Of a stretch of DNA of 64,000 nt, positions 1,423-10,721 are shown piece after piece (positions within the stretch are counted from its first letter, which is position 1; every line of letters begins with the position of its first letter). Below the pieces are notes generated by a model. The model saw nothing but the letters and a program-made list of their open reading frames with translations, did no database searches and was not told the DNA's origin. The translations under genes were made by a program, and so were the position numbers. The stretch spans positions 1 through 64,000 of IMG/VR virus record IMGVR_UViG_3300020477_000990. One strand, written 5' to 3'.

Positions 1423-1430
1423 TATAAATA
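1423..1430 (+). promoter_or_regulatory. T4-type late promoter TATAAATA
   Basis: Exact TATAAATA upstream of ORF 1449. Confidence 0.55.
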
Positions 1431-3426: not shown

Positions 3427-3873
3427 ATGACTATGCATTTAGAACGTGGCTTAACCACTCTGAATACAAAGAAGCGAAAGACTAAACCCAAGAAAATTGA
3501 GTATTATATGAAAGGGTTTAAAGAACAAAATAAGTTCTTAAAAAGTAAAGGTTTAGTACAAATGACCATGCAAGAATATATTGATTACAGACGTGGCAAG
3601 TTTAAGTCACCCGTTACTACAAATAGGAGTGTAGTGTCAACGGTTAGCACGTCGGTCTCCAAAACCGAAAGTGAGGGTTCGAATCCTTCCACTTCTGCCA
3701 AACCAGAACCTAAATTGAGTAACAAAATAGGCGGTGGTGCTACAAGAAATTGGCGTGAAGAAAAAGAAAGATTAGAAGTAAGTAGAAAATATTCAATTGT
3801 ACCTGCTTATAATAAAGGACCATATATGGTTGTATCAAAAGACGATTTAAAAACAGCAGGTAGAAAAGTATGA
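3427..3873 (+). CDS. Basic phage protein with C-terminal PAYNKGxY motif; contains tRNA-Trp internally
   Basis: Uninterrupted 148-codon ORF directly after a promoter; its stop overlaps the next ATG. Confidence 0.72.
   Translation: MTMHLERGLTTLNTKKRKTKPKKIEYYMKGFKEQNKFLKSKGLVQMTMQEYIDYRRGKFKSPVTTNRSVVSTVSTSVSKTESEGSNPSTSAKPEPKLSNKIGGGATRNWREEKERLEVSRKYSIVPAYNKGPYMVVSKDDLKTAGRKV
3625..3700 (+). tRNA. tRNA-Trp(CCA), nested in CDS 3427..3873
   Basis: AGGAGTG/CACTTCT acceptor, GTGT/GCAC D-stem, TCGGT-CTCCAAA-ACCGA, GAGGG-TTCGAAT-CCTTC, G73, encoded CCA. Confidence 0.93.
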
Positions 3874-4774: not shown

Positions 4775-5108
4775 AAAATTAGATATGAAAGCAGTAAAGA
4801 AAGAACTGGATGAAATGTTTGATAATTATAAACCAAATCAAAAAATAAAAAAAGAACCAGAAGTTATAGATTTGGTTGAACAAGTAGCAAGGGCAAATCA
4901 AAAAGAACGTGATGCATTTACTAGAGGATTAGTTGCAAAATGGCCTTTGTTAGCAAAACAAATTATGGATAGCATACAAGTTGAAATTTTTGAAGCACGA
5001 ATTAAAGAAGAGCAAGAAACTTTAGAACGTATTTCAGAAGAAGCACGTAAAGAGGATGAACCTCTAATATTAACAAAAGAAATGGAAGTAGGTAAAAATG
5101 GAAATTAA
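4767..5108 (+). CDS. Hypothetical protein
   Basis: ORF coupled to pepA. Confidence 0.6.
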   Translation: MVKKLDMKAVKKELDEMFDNYKPNQKIKKEPEVIDLVEQVARANQKERDAFTRGLVAKWPLLAKQIMDSIQVEIFEARIKEEQETLERISEEARKEDEPLILTKEMEVGKNGN

Positions 5109-6597
5109 ATTTATCGACGATATGGCAGGTAGTGGTGAAAGCAATTGCGAAGTACACTTCTTGTATAAAATTAAAGATGATATACAACTATCACAACCAT
5201 CAGCAATATTAGATGAAGGCACAGATGGATTATTAAGTGAAACATTAAACAATAATAAATTTAAAGGAAAGTTTTTAGATAGTTTCTTTATAACATCAAA
5301 TAATTTGCCTTGCCATGATGCATTGTTTATATGTGTTGGTGATCCTAATGAATTAACAGAAAGCAAAAATGAAAAAATTGGTGGAGCAATTTATAGTAAA
5401 TTGCAAGAACGTGGCACACAAGGAAAAGTATTAATTTTTATTGATGATAAAATGAAAGGTCATCCTGCAACAAATATTGGGTTTGGTATGCAGTTAAAAG
5501 AATATAAGTTTGACAAATATTTTACTAAAAAAGATAAAGAAAAAACAGACTTTGAAGTAGTTGTTTGTCGCGACGGTGTTGCATCTACAACATTAGAAAA
5601 AGAATTTATAGATAAACAAGCAATGGCTGATAGTATTGCCTTTACTAAAGATTTAATTTCTGAACCATCAAATGTATTGTATCCTAAATCATATGCTGAT
5701 AGAGTTAACGATTTAGAAAAATTTGGAATAAAAGTTACAGTATATGGTGAAAAAGAATTAAAAAAAATAGGTGCAGATGCATTATTGGCAGTTGGACAAG
5801 GTAGTGAAAGAGAATCACAAATGGTAGTAATGGAATGGCAAGGTGGTAAAAAATCTGAAAAACCTGTAGCATTTGTTGGTAAAGGAGTTTGCTTTGATAC
5901 TGGTGGGTATTCAATTAAGCCATCTAAAGGTTTAAAAGACATGAAATATGATATGGGTGGATCAGCAGTAGTTGTTGGTACTATGATGAGTATTGCAAAA
6001 CGTAATTTACCTATTAATGCAGTTGGAGTTATTGGATTAGTTGAAAATATGGTGTCTAGTACAGCATATAAGCCAGGTGATGTTATTAATTCTATGAGTG
6101 GGCAAACAATTGAAATTGATAATACAGATGCAGAAGGTAGAGTAGTATTAGCAGATTGTTTATGGTACACACAAGATAAGTTTAAACCAAAAACAATGAT
6201 TAATTTAGCAACATTAACAGGAGCAATATCAATTGCACTTGGTGATCAACTTGCTGGTATATTTTCAAATAATGATGAATTAAGTAATCAATTAATTGAT
6301 GCTGGGCATCAAGTAGATGAAAAAGTTTGGCGTTTACCATGCGATCCAATAGGAGAAAGATATGACAAGTATGTTGATTCAACTATTGCAGATATGCATA
6401 ATGTAGGTAAAGGTGGTGAAGCAAGTTCAACAACAGCGGCACAATTTTTGCAAAGGTTTGTTAATGATACTCCATGGACACATATTGATATAGCTGGAGT
6501 TACTTGGAATGATAAAGGATCTATGACAGCATCTGGTGGTGCAACTGGTTGGGGAGTTAAGCTCTTAAACAAATGGGTAGATAACCTTGATGGTTAA
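5098..6597 (+). CDS. pepA: Leucyl aminopeptidase (M17)
   Basis: VGKGVCFDTGG, MKYDMGG, NTDAEGR, ATLTGA, HIDIAG. Confidence 0.95.
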   Translation: MEIKFIDDMAGSGESNCEVHFLYKIKDDIQLSQPSAILDEGTDGLLSETLNNNKFKGKFLDSFFITSNNLPCHDALFICVGDPNELTESKNEKIGGAIYSKLQERGTQGKVLIFIDDKMKGHPATNIGFGMQLKEYKFDKYFTKKDKEKTDFEVVVCRDGVASTTLEKEFIDKQAMADSIAFTKDLISEPSNVLYPKSYADRVNDLEKFGIKVTVYGEKELKKIGADALLAVGQGSERESQMVVMEWQGGKKSEKPVAFVGKGVCFDTGGYSIKPSKGLKDMKYDMGGSAVVVGTMMSIAKRNLPINAVGVIGLVENMVSSTAYKPGDVINSMSGQTIEIDNTDAEGRVVLADCLWYTQDKFKPKTMINLATLTGAISIALGDQLAGIFSNNDELSNQLIDAGHQVDEKVWRLPCDPIGERYDKYVDSTIADMHNVGKGGEASSTTAAQFLQRFVNDTPWTHIDIAGVTWNDKGSMTASGGATGWGVKLLNKWVDNLDG

Positions 6598-6856
6598 GCA
6601 AGAAACAATATCACGTCAAGAGCTTAATGAATTAAAAGAATTAATTCAAGAAGAAGCATTAATAACTAGAAGGACAATAGTGAAAACATCACAAAAAACA
6701 GACCCACAAAGTTTAAGGCGTAAAGTTTCTGAAGTAGAACGAAAACAAAAACAGGAACAATATATGCGTAAAAAATATCCAGCAGTTAATGAAGCATATA
6801 AAAATTATCAAGAAGCATTTAAGTATTATAAAATGATAATGAGAACTGTAAAATAG
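6587..6856 (+). CDS. Hypothetical helical protein, paralogue of next ORF
   Basis: Shares SLRRK...EQYMRxxYPxVNEAYKxYQ with 6860..7093. Confidence 0.65.
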   Translation: MMVKQETISRQELNELKELIQEEALITRRTIVKTSQKTDPQSLRRKVSEVERKQKQEQYMRKKYPAVNEAYKNYQEAFKYYKMIMRTVK

Positions 6857-6859
6857 AGT

Positions 6860-7093
6860 ATGGACAAAGAAAAAGATTTAGCACATGAGTTTGAAAATAT
6901 GAGACAAGAATTAATGAAGCACCACGATACAGAATACGGAAATGAAATAGAAGTTCATTCTTTAAGACGTAAGCTCTTAAAACAAGAGCAAAAAATGAAG
7001 CATGAGCAATATATGAGAAGACGTTATCCGTCAGTAAATGAAGCATATAAGCAGTATCAAATGCTCCTAAAATTAACAAAATCGCATAAGTAA
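6860..7093 (+). CDS. Hypothetical helical protein, paralogue of previous ORF
   Basis: Same shared motif. Confidence 0.65.
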   Translation: MDKEKDLAHEFENMRQELMKHHDTEYGNEIEVHSLRRKLLKQEQKMKHEQYMRRRYPSVNEAYKQYQMLLKLTKSHK

Positions 7094-7107
7094 ATTGATA
7101 AATAAAT

Positions 7108-7133
7108 ACTGAAGAGCAGACTTCAGTTTATTT
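7108..7133 (+). terminator. Hairpin in hfq leader, possible terminator
   Basis: ACTGAAG/CTTCAGT stem followed by TTATTT. Confidence 0.35.
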
Positions 7134-7143
7134 AGGTATAACT

Positions 7144-7350
7144 ATGAACGAAAATGAAACAAATTTTATAAAAAAATTAATAGACAAAAATGCACAGGTG
7201 ACAATTTTTCTAATTAATGGTGTTAAACTAACTGGAGAAATTACCGCTGTGGATCAAAATACATTAAATTTGAAACGTGAAAAACATACTCAATTGGTAT
7301 ATAAAAACGCGATTTCAACTATAATGCCCCTAGAACCCCTAGAAATTTAA
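7144..7350 (+). CDS. hfq: RNA chaperone Hfq, divergent
   Basis: Sm1 VTIFLINGVKLTG and Sm2 QLVYKNAISTIMP. Confidence 0.9.
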   Translation: MNENETNFIKKLIDKNAQVTIFLINGVKLTGEITAVDQNTLNLKREKHTQLVYKNAISTIMPLEPLEI

Positions 7351-7351
7351 T

Positions 7352-7359
7352 TATAAATA
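7352..7359 (+). promoter_or_regulatory. T4-type late promoter TATAAATA
   Basis: Exact match directly before the non-coding structured region. Confidence 0.6.
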
Positions 7360-7363
7360 CTAT

Positions 7364-7575
7364 TGATATAGATGAGTAAGGAAACTTATGAAGGGACTGG
7401 AAAGGTTTTCCTATTTTAGAGCCCGACTATATAAGGTGTGTCATATCTCGCCTATTGACTGAACATATGGCCGGGTGAATATACCGTTGGGTAACACCAG
7501 AGAATTATTCTAACGGAACCCTGTAGAAGAAGGATATATTTTAGGCCAAAGTATAGCTGGGCATTGCAGGGTTTA
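7364..7575 (+). ncRNA. Putative structured ncRNA (~210 nt), family unrecognised
   Basis: No ORF, GC-richer than flanks, several nested stems (7376-7389 GAAA hairpin, 7421-7476, 7484-7516, 7517-7573). Confidence 0.6.
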
Positions 7576-7585
7576 GTGATTTTAA

Positions 7586-7614
7586 TTGACTTTTTATGAA
7601 AAAAATATTAAAAT
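7586..7614 (+). promoter_or_regulatory. Sigma70-type promoter
   Basis: TTGACT-N17-TAAAAT. Confidence 0.5.
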
Positions 7615-7636
7615 AAAACATAATAAGGAGAAATAT

Positions 7637-7819
7637 ATGAGTACAACAAATCAACAACTTTTAACTTTATTTGATGAATACAAAGAAAACAATGATAAGT
7701 TTGCAGAAAAAGGTAATAAAGCCGCAGGTACTAGAGCTAGAAAAGCCTTATCTGAAATGACAAAGTTAGCTAAAGTGAGAAGAAAAGAAATCCAAGAAGC
7801 AAAAACTGTAACGGCATAA
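7637..7819 (+). CDS. Small basic histone H1/Hc1-like nucleoid protein
   Basis: GNKAAGTRARKAL...RKEIQ; AAGGAG RBS before ATG 7637. Confidence 0.7.
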   Translation: MSTTNQQLLTLFDEYKENNDKFAEKGNKAAGTRARKALSEMTKLAKVRRKEIQEAKTVTA

Positions 7820-7823
7820 TTAA

Positions 7824-8366
7824 ATGGAAACTTCGAACGACAAGTACGAAATTATAAGAACGGTGTGGCGTTCTGGTCGCAAGAATGATTTTGGAGATGA
7901 ATTGGTTGTTACACAAGGTAATGTTAATTTAAAGTTAGCATATATTATGGCATGGGAAGTAAATGAAAATAGACCCGAGTGTGTTTGCTGGAATGGCACC
8001 GTAGCATACTTTCCACGTATGTTTTGGTTAGACAGCATTCCAAAAAATTTTATTAAAGTTTATAACCACTCTGAAGAGAAACATTACTTAATTGAAAAGG
8101 ATAAACATTATACTATAAATGAAGATGGCATTTATGTGAAGTATAATAAAGAAGAAGGTACAGATGTGTATCAACCACAATTTATAAATGTAACTAAAAA
8201 CCCATCAGCATTAACACAGGCAATAGAATATGTGCTTTGGTTTAATGAAAATCAACGTCAACTTGACACTTATAATAGGTTATTAAGTACGTCAAAACAA
8301 GCAAGAAAACGTAGAAGAAATAGAGCTTCTAAAACGGTTGAAAAACAGATAAATACTACATTATGA
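7824..8366 (+). CDS. Hypothetical protein
   Basis: 180-aa ORF in operon. Confidence 0.65.
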   Translation: METSNDKYEIIRTVWRSGRKNDFGDELVVTQGNVNLKLAYIMAWEVNENRPECVCWNGTVAYFPRMFWLDSIPKNFIKVYNHSEEKHYLIEKDKHYTINEDGIYVKYNKEEGTDVYQPQFINVTKNPSALTQAIEYVLWFNENQRQLDTYNRLLSTSKQARKRRRNRASKTVEKQINTTL

Positions 8367-8686
8367 TAACACTTACAGATTCAGCAAAACAACAGATTAT
8401 AGATTTGTGTAAGCAAAATGAAGTAGATGCAGTTAAGCTATCAGTAGAAGGTGGCGGATGTGCAGGCTTTAAGTATGACTGGGGATTTACTAGTAATGAT
8501 AAAATTGCATCAGATGATGAAGTTTTTGAATTAACAGAAGGTAAATTTGTAGTAGATGGTATGAGTGTGATGTATATTGCAGGTACAGAAATAGATTATG
8601 TACGTGAAGTATTTGGTTCACATTTTGAAATTAGAAATCCATCAGCATCATCGTCATGTGGCTGTGGTGAAAGCTTCGGAGTCTAA
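8363..8686 (+). CDS. iscA: A-type Fe-S carrier (IscA/HesB family)
   Basis: GGGCAGFKY and CGCGESF. Confidence 0.92.
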   Translation: MITLTDSAKQQIIDLCKQNEVDAVKLSVEGGGCAGFKYDWGFTSNDKIASDDEVFELTEGKFVVDGMSVMYIAGTEIDYVREVFGSHFEIRNPSASSSCGCGESFGV

Positions 8687-8687
8687 T

Positions 8688-8927
8688 ATGTCTGACATTA
8701 AAAATGTTTTTGAACGTCCTGATCTAGATGATGAAAGTTTAGTACAACTAGTTAGAAGTATTCAACAAAAATTGGCTTACATTGAAAAGACAGGTGGTTA
8801 TACATCAGCTCATGAGCAAATGAGAAGACAGTTAGATTTTTTACTAATAGAATTAAATACTCGTCAAAATAAAAAAGAAAGTGATGTAGTATTAAATGAA
8901 AAGCCATTTATAATTGGTGAGGAGTAA
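8688..8927 (+). CDS. Hypothetical protein
   Basis: ATG just after the iscA stop. Confidence 0.55.
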   Translation: MSDIKNVFERPDLDDESLVQLVRSIQQKLAYIEKTGGYTSAHEQMRRQLDFLLIELNTRQNKKESDVVLNEKPFIIGEE

Positions 8928-8931
8928 CTTT

Positions 8932-9111
8932 ATGTCAATGAATTTAAATGAACAAAAATTAAAAAGAGAATATGAATATTTAAAAGATAAAGTTGAAGAA
9001 GCAGAAAAAGTAAGAGACTTAAGAAGAGGACCTAATAGTTGGAAAAAATTAAGAACACTTAAAAAATTAAAATTAAATATAAAAGATAGGTTAGCACAAT
9101 TAGAAAGATAA
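8932..9111 (+). CDS. Small coiled-coil protein (DUF465-like)
   Basis: GAGGAG RBS; LKKLKLNIKDRL C-terminus. Confidence 0.55.
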   Translation: MSMNLNEQKLKREYEYLKDKVEEAEKVRDLRRGPNSWKKLRTLKKLKLNIKDRLAQLER

Positions 9112-9112
9112 A

Positions 9113-9532
9113 ATGGGTAAAAAACCAAAGTCGAATACAAAAACGTCATATACATCTAAAGGTGGCCTTGGCGGAAGAGTAGGACGCAAAACCCGTAACA
9201 TGATGAGACGTGCAAGACGTTCAGGTGAATTAACAGATGAATCAGTTATGAGAGGTTGGGTAGCTAGAGAAAAATATTGGAAAGAGTTATCAACAAGACG
9301 TGATCAAAAATCAAAAGATAGATATGCCAAATGGGCAGAGGAAGAAAAAATTAAATTAGAGGCTAGTAAATTACATAGAACATATAAGCCTGCAGGTTGT
9401 ACTTATGGCGCCTGTGTTCAAGCATTGAAAACTAATTATTTGTCACAATTTACAGAAAAGTGGAATAAACAATTAGGCGAAACTTCAGGCGGAAATATAC
9501 ATTATGGAAGACAGCGAAGACGACCTTCATAG
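9113..9532 (+). CDS. Basic hypothetical protein
   Basis: ORF in operon. Confidence 0.6.
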   Translation: MGKKPKSNTKTSYTSKGGLGGRVGRKTRNMMRRARRSGELTDESVMRGWVAREKYWKELSTRRDQKSKDRYAKWAEEEKIKLEASKLHRTYKPAGCTYGACVQALKTNYLSQFTEKWNKQLGETSGGNIHYGRQRRRPS

Positions 9533-9761
9533 TCAGCCGCGGGAAAGTCTTTCTGAGAAAGTCGTTCTTCCCCCGGCCAAGCTAAAAAAGAGAGTCAATT
9601 ACATTCTCCAAAAATTAATAATTGAGCATTCACCCAAAGAAGTTGTTGATTATCTATTTGACTTTATTAACCAAAATTATAAAGGTGATAAAAGAATAGA
9701 TGTAGCACTTAAAGAATTTTTAGAAAAACAAGAAAACAATAAAGACATTGACAATTCCTAG
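9504..9761 (+). CDS. Hypothetical protein
   Basis: ORF in operon. Confidence 0.5.
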   Translation: MEDSEDDLHSQPRESLSEKVVLPPAKLKKRVNYILQKLIIEHSPKEVVDYLFDFINQNYKGDKRIDVALKEFLEKQENNKDIDNS

Positions 9762-9776
9762 AATTTAATATATAAT
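9748..9776 (+). promoter_or_regulatory. Sigma70-type early promoter
   Basis: TTGACA-N17-TATAAT. Confidence 0.8.
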
Positions 9777-9785
9777 TTGGTTATA

Positions 9786-10325
9786 ATGATTGATACTGGA
9801 AGAATTACAAATATAAATGAATATGGTGAACCGGTTGTTAATTGTAATGACCTAGTTGAATTAATATATCAAGGTAAAACAATAGACAATTTAAAAGTAA
9901 ATGATAAGCGAATTGACTTATATAATACTGTAATTTCTGATTTAAATATTGATTGGCCAGAAATTAAAAAATTATCTAAGATAGATATTTCTGTAAAAGA
10001 TTATGATACTGCTCTACAATCAGATTGGTATATGCCAGATGAATATAAAAAACTTGATGTAGTATCACATATAAAATCATTAGCAAAATCAGATGAAGAG
10101 ATAAAAAGAGTTGACACAGAGCTTGAATTATATGTAAAATATGATTTGTTAAATGTATTAAGATTTTTAGTATATTTAATTAAAATAATGAGAGATAATA
10201 ATATTGTATGGGGAGTTGGAAGAGGATCATCAGTTTCATCATATGTATTATATTTGATAGGAATTCATAAAGTAAATTCTATTAAATATGGCTTAGATAT
10301 AGGTGAATTTTTAAAAGATAAATAA
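9786..10325 (+). CDS. Stand-alone fragment of DNA polymerase III alpha (DnaE)
   Basis: RVDTELEL...WGVGRGSSVSSYVLYLIGIHKV...EFL matches the DnaE GRGS region; no DxD catalytic motif. Confidence 0.8.
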   Translation: MIDTGRITNINEYGEPVVNCNDLVELIYQGKTIDNLKVNDKRIDLYNTVISDLNIDWPEIKKLSKIDISVKDYDTALQSDWYMPDEYKKLDVVSHIKSLAKSDEEIKRVDTELELYVKYDLLNVLRFLVYLIKIMRDNNIVWGVGRGSSVSSYVLYLIGIHKVNSIKYGLDIGEFLKDK

Positions 10326-10343
10326 TTATATAGGAGTTTTATT

Positions 10344-10721
10344 ATGGCAACTAGAAGAACAAATCAAGGTCAAACTTTAGATATGGAAGGTCTTGCTTTA
10401 AGAAATGAAAAAGCTGTAGCAGTAGGAAATATGAATACTAATGCTAGAGGCGATAAACTTGATGCAGATGGTAATATAGTTAAAACTAAAACTGAACAAG
10501 CACAGGCTTATTATGCAAATAATCCAAAAGCAGTTGTGAAAACAGTTAGTATTAAAGATGCTATTGATCCAGTTCAAACTAAAAAAATGGAAAGTGCACC
10601 AGTACAAAAAGCAAAACCAAAAGCACCTAAGGCAAAACCAGCACCAGCACAAAAGGTAAAGAAAACTGTTGAAGTTGAATTACCAAATGGTGATATTGAA
10701 CTTAGAGAAATAGAAGAATAA
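10344..10721 (+). CDS. Hypothetical late protein
   Basis: GATAAATA at 10317, AGGAG RBS; AVGNMNTNARGD. Confidence 0.7.
   Translation: MATRRTNQGQTLDMEGLALRNEKAVAVGNMNTNARGDKLDADGNIVKTKTEQAQAYYANNPKAVVKTVSIKDAIDPVQTKKMESAPVQKAKPKAPKAKPAPAQKVKKTVEVELPNGDIELREIEE

What the first reader, a model, noticed from the sequence alone, without database searches (positions are those of the whole stretch)
7352..7575. Unrecognised ~210-nt structured late ncRNA directly after hfq
Seen: a long non-coding stretch in a very dense genome, preceded by TATAAATA. It folds by eye into GTAAG-GAAA-CTTAT (GNRA loop); GCCCGACTATAT/ATATGGCCGGGT (7421-7476) enclosing AGGTG/CGCCT, whose loop GTCA can pair with TGAC at 7456; CCGTTGG/CTAACGG (7484-7516); and AACCCTGTA/TGCAGGGTT (7517-7573). 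Loop CCAG (7497) may pair with CTGG (7557). Many G-U pairs favour RNA-level structure. No tmRNA, RNase P or tRNA hallmarks. Inference: a new phage RNA, possibly partnered with the phage Hfq.
Basis: partly seen in the sequence, partly recalled or inferred. Interest (0 to 1): 0.72.

Follow-up and report, generated by a model that had tools for sequence, protein, structure and literature searches.

The report
New late small RNA beside phage hfq
The gap after the phage's hfq gene encodes a real, abundant, about 217-base structured RNA made from a T4-type late promoter; it matches no known RNA family and is found only in marine jumbo phages that carry their own Hfq, which suggests a virus-encoded RNA and chaperone pair.

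Summary
The finding holds. Window 7365-7581 (+) is a discrete non-coding RNA. In three ocean metatranscriptomes, contigs start exactly at 7365, six bases after TATAAATA (7352-7359). One contig ends at 7581. Its depth is about 150, against 0-19 for this phage's flanking genes.

The genome is a 328-kb T4-like phage (gp23 capsid). TATAAATA is avoided in it except in front of genes.

48 related marine loci keep the order hfq, gap, hc1. All 42 distinct gaps carry a late-promoter motif.

Three helices covary:
- a GGU-triloop hairpin;
- a new helix P4, which encloses a small hairpin;
- a 65-nt irregular 3' hairpin that ends in a U-rich tail.

Rfam and ARAGORN find nothing.

Function is inferred, not shown. 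The long element occurs only where hfq is present; 53 hc1 loci without hfq lack it. hfq also carries late-promoter motifs. An Hfq-partnered late riboregulator is therefore my best reading. A leader or attenuator for hc1 is the main rival.

The parts
7144..7350 (+). Phage hfq gene (68 aa, Sm-like core only). It is preceded by an ATAAATA late-promoter-like motif.
   Evidence: Pfam Hfq E 3.6e-19. Best solved relative 6gwk_A, E 2.9e-12, with YKNAISTIMP against YKHAISTIMP. A late-promoter-like motif lies upstream of hfq in 39 of 39 loci.
7352..7359 (+). TATAAATA, a T4-type late promoter (-10-like element, no -35 element).
   Evidence: Sequence. The window has 5 copies against 18 +/- 3.7 expected, all on the + strand. 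In the genome, 22 of the 25 + strand copies lie in the roughly 7% that is non-coding. A TAAATA-type motif is present in all 42 distinct homologous gaps.
7365..7581 (+). The RNA itself, about 217 nt.
   Evidence: Metatranscriptome contigs: X19, 219 nt, depth 149.9, covers 7365-7581 with 0 mismatches. X25 and X26 cover 7365-7523 at depths 60.8 and 22. A relative's contig in X20 ends at 7580. The strand follows from the promoter and from G-U pairs.
7376..7389 (+).
   Evidence: Sequence. L089 has GCAAG-UUUA-CUUGU at the same place. Not conserved more widely.
7399..7411 (+). GGU-triloop hairpin: GGAAA-GGU-UUUCC, loop at 7404-7406.
   Evidence: Found in all 23 group A and B RNAs at nt 17-39. GGU is invariant. 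The three inner pairs are 100% paired with AU/GC swaps. There are 48 compensatory cells, and 0 of 500 shuffles reach the observed score.
7421..7476 (+). Variable central domain.
   Evidence: 11 of 12 positions pair. Positional analogues exist in L086 and L089. An alternative MFE pairing is seen.
7477..7510 (+). Helix P4 (GAAUA 7477-7481 with UAUUC 7506-7510), enclosing hairpin P5 (UUGG 7487-7490, loop GUAACA, CCAG 7497-7500).
   Evidence: P4 encloses 19-24 nt in 19 of 23 relatives. In alignment A7, 78.6% of cells pair against 56% in shuffles, with 30 compensatory cells and 0 of 500 shuffles as high.
7513..7577 (+). 3' domain: a 65-nt irregular hairpin. The basal stem is 7513-7526 with 7564-7577. 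The inner stem is 7532-7542 with 7548-7558. The apical loop AGGCC is 7543-7547. G-A mismatches at 7515/7575 and 7534/7556 are conserved.
   Evidence: Gapless 80-column alignment A6. 21 pairs, 96.3% paired, 11 pairs with compensatory changes, 0 of 500 shuffles as high, slid controls at most 46%. The covariance model finds a single copy in the genome.
7572..7583 (+). U-rich tail UUUAGUGAUUUU, the probable termination zone.
   Evidence: The RNA contigs end at 7580/7581. TTTAGTGA is invariant in groups A and B. The simple terminator scan does not call it.
7586..7614 (+). Sigma-70-type promoter of hc1: TTGACT-N17-TAAAAT.
   Evidence: TTGAC[T/A]-N17-TA[A/C]AAT is present in 23 of 23 group A and B loci.
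7637..7819 (+). hc1, a histone H1-like protein gene and the downstream neighbour.
   Evidence: Pfam Hc1 E 4.1e-18.

Best explanation
Shown:
- Window 7365-7581 (+) is a stand-alone, abundant, about 217-nt non-coding RNA of a T4-like marine jumbo phage.
- Its 5' end lies 6 nt after a TATAAATA late promoter.
- It ends in the U-rich tail after a conserved 65-nt irregular hairpin.
- It folds into at least a GGU-triloop hairpin, a helix P4 that encloses a small hairpin, and the 3' hairpin, all supported by covariation.
- It belongs to no described RNA family.

Inferred:
- It is the RNA partner of the phage's own Hfq. Both appear to be made late.
- Hfq would bind the 3' hairpin and U-rich tail, and perhaps the purine-rich internal loop. 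The complex would act as a riboregulator on phage or host messages that are still unknown.
- The 3' hairpin also works as a terminator. It insulates the neighbouring hc1 gene, which in this phage has its own sigma-70-type promoter.
For: Discrete transcript:
- Contigs from three RNA runs start at 7365, and one ends at 7581.
- Depth is 150, against 0 in the two bins just upstream and 11-19 for exact-match flanking contigs.

Late promoter:
- The spacing fits a -10-like late promoter (PMC7892883).
- The genome has a gp23 capsid gene.
- TATAAATA is avoided except in front of genes.

Conservation:
- The hfq, gap, hc1 order is kept in 48 loci, and all 42 distinct gaps carry the promoter motif.
- Covariation supports three helices.
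- The 3' domain is single-copy in the genome.
- No known family matches.

Link to Hfq:
- The long element is present in all loci with hfq (gaps of 154-320 nt).
- It is absent from 53 distinct hc1 loci without hfq, where hc1 mostly sits 20-100 nt behind a late promoter.
- hfq has late-promoter-like motifs in 39 of 39 loci.
- hfq mRNA is seen in the same samples (record 10).
- Phage-borne hfq is rare: 5 of 50,697 records, two of them bacterial contigs, and no PHROG family.
Against: - No binding data exist.
- The co-occurrence with hfq may reflect a single evolutionary event in one lineage.
- The tail has only four consecutive U and is interrupted (UUUAGUGAUUUU). Some group B members lack a U run altogether.
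- The A/U-rich stretch before the 3' hairpin is paired in P4, so it is not a free Hfq site.
- No single-stranded seed of 7 nt or more is shared between groups A and B.
- No complementarity to the hc1 start region was found.
- The phage Hfq has N in place of the usual H in YKHAI, and its rim region lacks the arginine cluster that I recall from E. coli Hfq (the E. coli comparison is from memory).
- In groups C and D there is no promoter between the element and hc1, so there it must be part of the hc1 leader.
- The contigs are unstranded.
Confidence: 0.45

Rival explanations
1. The element is a cis-acting leader or attenuator of hc1. Late transcripts start at 7365 and mostly stop at the 3' hairpin. 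Regulated read-through gives late Hc1, and the 217-nt species is the terminated leader.
For: - The element always lies directly upstream of hc1.
- In 18 of 19 group C and D gaps, only 19-56 nt and no sigma-70 promoter separate the 3' domain from the hc1 start. There hc1 must be transcribed through the element.
- In hfq-less phages hc1 is a late-promoter gene, so the element sits inside an ancestral late hc1 leader.
- Terminated leaders are typically abundant in RNA-seq.
Against: - In this phage and all 23 group A and B loci, hc1 has its own TTGACT-N17-TAAAAT promoter after the hairpin.
- RNA depth drops from 150 to 0 between 7582 and 7792 in X19.
- No alternative anti-terminator pairing covaries. 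The GGU loop against GAACC was checked by eye and did not correlate.
- Sequence outside the 3' hairpin changes fast, unlike metabolite-sensing cores.
- hc1 does without the element wherever hfq is absent.
Confidence: 0.27
2. It is a protein-binding or scaffold RNA that does not work through Hfq. Examples would be a decoy for Hc1, or a 6S-like modulator of RNA polymerase or the ribosome.
For: - It is highly structured, with few free bases.
- Conserved non-canonical features (two G-A mismatches, a 5x5 internal loop, invariant GGU and AGGCC loops) look like protein-recognition sites.
- It is very abundant.
Against: - No match to 6S, SRP, Y RNA or any other Rfam model, even at E up to 10.
- It has no rod-like shape with a central bubble.
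- This reading does not explain the exclusive co-occurrence with hfq.
Confidence: 0.15
3. There is no separate function. The gap only holds an hfq terminator, a late promoter and the hc1 promoter, and the rest is spacer.
For: - Thermodynamic z-scores are unremarkable.
- The middle of the RNA is poorly conserved in sequence.
Against: - Compensatory changes maintain three helices across relatives whose flanking proteins are 58-70% (p180) and 65-93% (Hfq) identical to the window's.
- The late promoter lies after the hfq stop and drives the RNA.
- Length and architecture are kept in 42 distinct sequences.
- The transcript is far more abundant than its neighbours.
Confidence: 0.06
4. It is a divergent member of a known family that Rfam models miss, or a self-cleaving ribozyme.
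For: Phage versions of cellular RNAs can be very divergent. The genome does carry other cellular-type RNAs (tmRNA and tRNAs).
Against: - cmscan with permissive filters gives only noise hits on 7050-7700 (E 2.6-9.8), and none up to E 1 in two relatives.
- The genome's tmRNA lies elsewhere.
- The 5' end coincides with a promoter start rather than a cleavage site.
Confidence: 0.04

Closest known systems
Hfq-dependent small RNAs encoded by phages and prophages (for example DicF, IpeX, AgvB/AsxR); named from my own knowledge
   Same: A short, independently transcribed non-coding RNA on a phage genome. It ends in a stable hairpin plus a U-rich tail and is presumed to act with Hfq.
   Different: - Those RNAs use the host Hfq, are mostly 50-110 nt long, and have a conserved single-stranded seed.
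- This RNA is about 217 nt and almost fully structured.
- It is driven by a T4-type late promoter and sits next to a phage-encoded hfq.
- It shows no conserved seed.
T4-type late transcription units (TATAAATA, gp55/gp33/gp45; PMC7892883)
   Same: The same 8-bp -10-like element with no -35 element. The RNA 5' end lies 6 nt downstream. The genome has a gp23-type capsid gene.
   Different: Known T4 late units encode proteins, mainly structural ones. To my knowledge a late-promoter-driven stable non-coding RNA has not been described for T4.
IhtA sRNA and hctA (Hc1) in Chlamydia; from my own knowledge
   Same: A small RNA associated with a histone H1-like Hc1 gene, whose product must be kept in check.
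   Different: - There is no Rfam match to IhtA.
- No complementarity to the hc1 start region was found.
- IhtA is Hfq-independent and acts in trans from another locus.
Terminator-type riboswitches and leader attenuators
   Same: The order is promoter, structured RNA, terminator-like hairpin, gene. The short terminated species is abundant.
   Different: - In this phage a separate promoter lies between the hairpin and the gene.
- No conserved ligand-type core is present.
- No covarying anti-terminator was found.
T4 stable RNAs species 1 and 2 (RNA C and D); from my own knowledge
   Same: Stable, structured small RNAs of unknown function encoded by a T4-type phage.
   Different: The T4 RNAs are processed from the tRNA cluster transcript. 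This RNA has its own late promoter and lies about 3.7 kb from the nearest tRNA. I could not compare sequences.

Membership tests
Any Rfam 15 family (including 6S, SRP, tmRNA, RNase P, Y RNA, IhtA, the IMES RNAs and known riboswitches) | A covariance-model score at or above the family's gathering score | tested here: not met
   No hit in 7352-7600 at gathering score. At E up to 10 on 7050-7700, only five noise hits of 11-21 bits against cut-offs of 43-100. Nothing up to E 1 in relatives L002 and L037.
tRNA / tmRNA | ARAGORN or Rfam detection | tested here: not met
   ARAGORN finds only three tRNAs, at 1-76, 1346-1420 and 3625-3700. The genome's tmRNA lies at 94,937-95,228.
T4-type late transcription unit | A TATAAATA -10-like element without a -35 element, used as a promoter motif across the genome | tested here: met
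   7352-7359. The motif is depleted 3.6-fold in the window and is strand-biased. 22 of 25 + strand copies lie in non-coding DNA.
T4-type late transcription unit | An RNA 5' end a few bases downstream of the motif | tested here: met
   Contigs from three RNA runs begin at 7365, 6 nt after the motif. The contigs are unstranded, and 5' triphosphate status is unknown.
T4-type late transcription unit | A T4-like genome that encodes gp55, gp33 and gp45 | not tested
   Only the gp23 capsid gene was sought and found (PF07068, E 5.9e-97). gp55, gp33 and gp45 were not searched for.
Hfq-dependent sRNA | An independent transcription unit that ends in a hairpin followed by a U tail | tested here: inconclusive
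   It has its own promoter, and the contig ends in the U-rich tail. The tail is interrupted (UUUAGUGAUUUU), some relatives lack a U run, and the simple terminator scan does not call it.
Hfq-dependent sRNA | Physical binding to and stabilisation by Hfq | not testable with these tools
   There is only co-occurrence and shared late-promoter motifs. A complex prediction with a hexamer plus RNA exceeds the tool's chain limit.
Hfq-dependent sRNA | A conserved single-stranded seed complementary to a target | tested here: not met
   No unpaired stretch of 7 nt or more is shared by groups A and B. Duplex energies with the hc1 start region match those of shuffles, z from -1.5 to +1.1. Other targets were not tested.
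Leader / attenuator of the downstream gene | No promoter between the element and the regulated gene | tested here: not met
   TTGACT-N17-TAAAAT at 7586-7614, present in 23 of 23 group A and B loci. The feature is met in groups C and D.
IhtA-like repressor of hc1 | Base-pairing with the hc1 start region | tested here: not met

The most novel reading that the evidence does not exclude
A virus-encoded Sm-like ribonucleoprotein. The phage brings both an Hfq and a dedicated, highly structured RNA that is made late. Together they would control late events such as synthesis or action of the histone-like Hc1 and DNA condensation, in a host (probably an AT-rich marine alphaproteobacterium) whose own RNA-chaperone network is minimal. 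This would be the first cognate phage Hfq and RNA pair.
Probability: 0.2. Interest if true: 0.85.

Novelty: new variant of a known kind. Interest (0 to 1): 0.7.

Why it matters
- Phage-encoded small RNAs are few, and phage-encoded Hfq is very rare: 5 of 50,697 deposited records, two of which are bacterial contigs.
- Here a widespread group of uncultured marine T4-like jumbo phages keeps an hfq gene next to a conserved structured RNA. [quoted passage not shown]
- This gives a concrete, testable candidate for a virus-supplied RNA and chaperone pair.
- It shows that T4-type late promoters can drive stable non-coding RNAs.
- It adds a new RNA family, with 42 sequence variants and three covarying helices, that can be modelled and then searched for in marine data.

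Tried and rejected
- **Rfam.** At gathering score there is no match in or near the finding; the only Rfam hits are tRNAs and a tmRNA elsewhere in the genome, and at permissive thresholds only noise.
- **ARAGORN.** Nothing in the region.
- **blastn of the region against 50,697 phage records.** No match.
- **nhmmer and blastn against the first 80 hc1 loci.** No match, even though L002 and L037 turned out to be syntenic. The sequence evolves too fast for this.
- **The search for homologous proteins.** The database was switched off, so this query could not be made.
- **Hfq and p180 scans of IMG/VR.** Only one related contig was found.
- **IUPAC pattern for the 3' domain in IMG/VR.** It found the same contig plus three chance hits inside coding DNA.
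- **Covariance model R1 of the 3' domain.**
  - One copy in the own genome.
  - It does not detect the group C and D elements.
  - Their homology to groups A and B therefore rests on position, promoter, the shared basal-stem pattern (a G-A mismatch next to a G-U pair, with covarying flanks) and the GUUGCU motif, all read directly.
- **IhtA-like pairing with the hc1 start region.** No signal. An earlier run of that script timed out.
- **Anti-terminator idea** (GGU-loop region against GAACC of the 3' stem). No correlated changes by eye, so I dropped it.
- **Kissing-loop idea** (GUAAC against GUUGC loops). It fits some group B members but not L095, L097 or L105. It is better explained by helix P4.
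CCGTTGG/CTAACGG and the two pseudoknots are not conserved.
- **A 15-codon ORF starting at 7372.** It has no ribosome-binding site and is absent from L089.
- **PHROGs.** No family for hfq, hc1 or the three neighbouring ORFs.
- **Complex prediction.** Not sent, because an Hfq hexamer plus RNA exceeds six chains and RNA jobs get no verdict.
- **Literature.** A paper on pelagimyophages does not mention Hfq, tmRNA or Hc1.

Full report
**Context.** The window is the first 64 kb of a 328,149-bp virus record with direct terminal repeats. The genome is 32% G+C and about 93% coding. It encodes a T4 gp23-type major capsid protein (PF07068, E 5.9e-97). Around the finding the + strand carries:
- an M17 aminopeptidase (5098-6597);
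- two small paralogous ORFs;
- hfq (7144-7350; Pfam Hfq, E 3.6e-19);
- a 286-nt gap;
- hc1, a histone H1-like gene (7637-7819; E 4.1e-18);
- a 180-aa ORF with no known family (p180);
- an IscA-type gene.

**The observation.** The gap is the 13th largest of 247 gaps, whose median is 50 nt. Folding energy alone is unremarkable: z is -1.4 on the + strand and 0.0 on the - strand. Energy alone therefore does not lift the hand-drawn fold above chance.

**The promoter.** TATAAATA (7352-7359) occurs 5 times in the window against 18 +/- 3.7 expected, always on the + strand. Genome-wide there are 25 + strand copies. Of these, 22 lie in the roughly 7% of non-coding DNA, mostly 20-60 nt before a start codon. 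This is the signature of a T4-type late promoter, a -10-like element with no -35 element (PMC7892883).

**Expression.** Public runs were searched for the sequence. Marine metatranscriptomes hold the 249-nt region far better than its surroundings: 0.84 of the sampled words, against 0.21 for a 1.8-kb stretch in the same run. I then laid four RNA runs on 4800-10700:
- In X19, a 219-nt contig at depth 149.9 covers 7365-7581 with no mismatch.
- In X25 and X26, contigs at depths 60.8 and 22 cover 7365-7523.
- All three start at 7365, exactly 6 nt after the promoter motif.
- The two bins just upstream (6967-7360) have depth 0 in X19. Exact-match flanking contigs reach 11-19.
- DNA carry-over therefore cannot explain the peak.
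- In X20, a 157-nt contig at depth 64.7 matches only 7509-7580. Upstream it continues with sequence identical to relative L090, so a second phage of the group makes the same RNA with the same 3' end.

The contigs are unstranded. The strand follows from the promoter and from G-U pairs (see below).

**Relatives.** No isolated phage matches the DNA, or the p180 protein by tblastn. Two syntenic IMG/VR contigs emerged from an hc1 scan. A scan of metagenome contigs with p180 gave 51 marine loci. Every locus that contains both genes (48 loci, 42 distinct gaps) has the order hfq, gap of 154-320 nt, hc1. All 42 gaps begin with a TATAAATA, AATAAATA, CTAAATA or CATAAATA motif right after hfq. They fall into four groups:
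- A: the window and six others;
- B: 16 sequences;
- C: 17 shorter RNAs of 115-139 nt;
- D: two sequences.

**Structure.** All 23 group A and B RNAs have a hairpin with an invariant GGU triloop at nt 17-39 (window 7399-7411).
- Its three inner pairs are always paired, with AU/GC swaps.
- Overall there are 48 compensatory cells, against 18.5 in shuffles, and 0 of 500 shuffles reach the observed score.

The last 80 nt align without gaps. They form one long irregular hairpin (window 7513-7577).
- It has 21 pairs, and 96.3% of cells are paired, against 82.5% in shuffles and at most 46% when the partner is slid.
- 11 pairs show changes on both sides.
- It also has two conserved G-A mismatches, a 5x5 internal loop and an AGGCC apical loop.
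- About 17% of its cells are G-U pairs. That fits the + strand only.

The stretch just before it is not free. It forms helix P4 (7477-7481 with 7506-7510), which encloses a 19-24-nt hairpin in 19 of 23 sequences.
- Variants include GUAAGA/UCUUAC, GCAAGA/UCUUGC, GCAAAA/UUUUGC, GUAAAA/UUUUAC and GGUAA/UUACC.
- 78.6% of cells pair, against 56% in shuffles, with 30 compensatory cells and 0 of 500 shuffles as high.
- One caveat: the 19 sequences were chosen because they show the helix.

The central part is variable, and I could not settle it. In group C the predicted 5' end pairs with the segment just before the 3' domain, and this pairing covaries (AGACAUA/UAUGUCU, GUAGCGA/UCGCAAC, CCGUAAG/CUUAAGG). 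Across groups B, C and D the base of the 3' hairpin keeps a G-A mismatch next to a G-U pair, while the flanking pairs swap (AC/GU, GU/AC, GAGU/ACUC).

**Known families.** Rfam gives nothing in the region. ARAGORN finds only three tRNAs elsewhere in the window. A covariance model of the 3' domain finds a single copy in the genome. It does not reach groups C and D.

**What the RNA is tied to.**
- In all 23 group A and B loci, a TTGAC[T/A]-N17-TA[A/C]AAT promoter follows the hairpin by 14-25 nt and precedes hc1. There the RNA is a separate unit.
- In 18 of 19 group C and D gaps, no such promoter fits into the 19-56 nt before hc1. There the element must be part of the hc1 leader.
- Among 53 distinct hc1 loci from other marine phages that lack hfq, 48 have less than 100 nt upstream of hc1, often a late-promoter motif followed by 20-40 nt. 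None shows the long element.
- hfq itself is preceded by a late-promoter-like motif in 39 of 39 loci.
- hfq mRNA is present in the same sample.
- The Hfq has a normal Sm-like core. Its best solved relative is 6gwk_A, with YKNAI in place of YKHAI.
- Phage-borne hfq is rare: 5 of 50,697 records, two of them Salmonella contigs, and no PHROG family.

**Interpretation.** Shown: a discrete, abundant, structured RNA that starts at a late promoter and defines a new family restricted to hfq-bearing T4-like marine jumbo phages. Inferred, and my preferred reading (0.45): it is the RNA partner of the phage Hfq, with the 3' hairpin serving both as terminator and as binding platform. The main rival (0.27) is a leader or attenuator for late hc1 expression, which fits groups C and D well. 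The two readings could be combined if Hfq acts on this RNA to set Hc1 synthesis. I found no pairing with the hc1 start region, no conserved seed and no covarying anti-terminator. The target and mode of action therefore remain open.

Noticed in passing
genome 94,937-95,228 (L142:10937-11228), outside the window: The phage encodes an alphaproteobacterial-type permuted (two-piece) tmRNA (RF01849, 131.6 bits; RF04321, 111.1 bits). Together with the 32% G+C content, this hints at an AT-rich marine alphaproteobacterial host such as SAR11. The host was not established.
   Followed up: partly
genome 112,664; 116,438; 269,310 (outside the window): Three further TATAAATA motifs are followed by apparently non-coding, G+C-richer sequence rather than by a ribosome-binding site and start codon. 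The region 112,565-112,794 folds with z -5.2. These may be more late-promoter RNAs or leaders.
   Followed up: partly
window 1423-1430: A TATAAATA motif lies 3 nt after tRNA-Gly (1346-1420). Another, at genome 323,366, sits directly in front of a tRNA. Some tRNAs may therefore be late transcripts.
   Followed up: no
window 7108-7127: A terminator-like hairpin (7 pairs followed by TTATTT) lies between an ATAAATAAATA late-promoter-like motif and the hfq start. If that promoter is used, the hairpin is inside the hfq leader.
   Followed up: no
window 6587-6856 and 6860-7093: Two adjacent small ORFs (89 and 77 aa) share a C-terminal motif (EQYMR..YP.VNEAYK.YQ). They look like tandem paralogues. Neither matches any Pfam or PHROG family. 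One copy is conserved upstream of hfq in relatives.
   Followed up: partly
loci L003-L081 (hc1 loci of other marine phages): hc1 is widespread in marine phage contigs. It usually sits 20-60 nt behind a TATAAATA or ATAAATA motif, which makes it a late gene there. In the window's group it instead has a sigma-70-type promoter.
   Followed up: partly
window 7824-8366: A 180-aa ORF with a strongly basic tail (KQARKRRRNRASK) always follows hc1 in this lineage. It has no match in Pfam, PHROGs or the phage record collection.
   Followed up: partly
window 5785-5981: RNA-run depth peaks here (38, 17.5 and 39 in three runs). The contigs carry loose ends unlike the window, so this is cross-mapping from the conserved M17 peptidase core of other organisms and not phage expression.
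   Followed up: no
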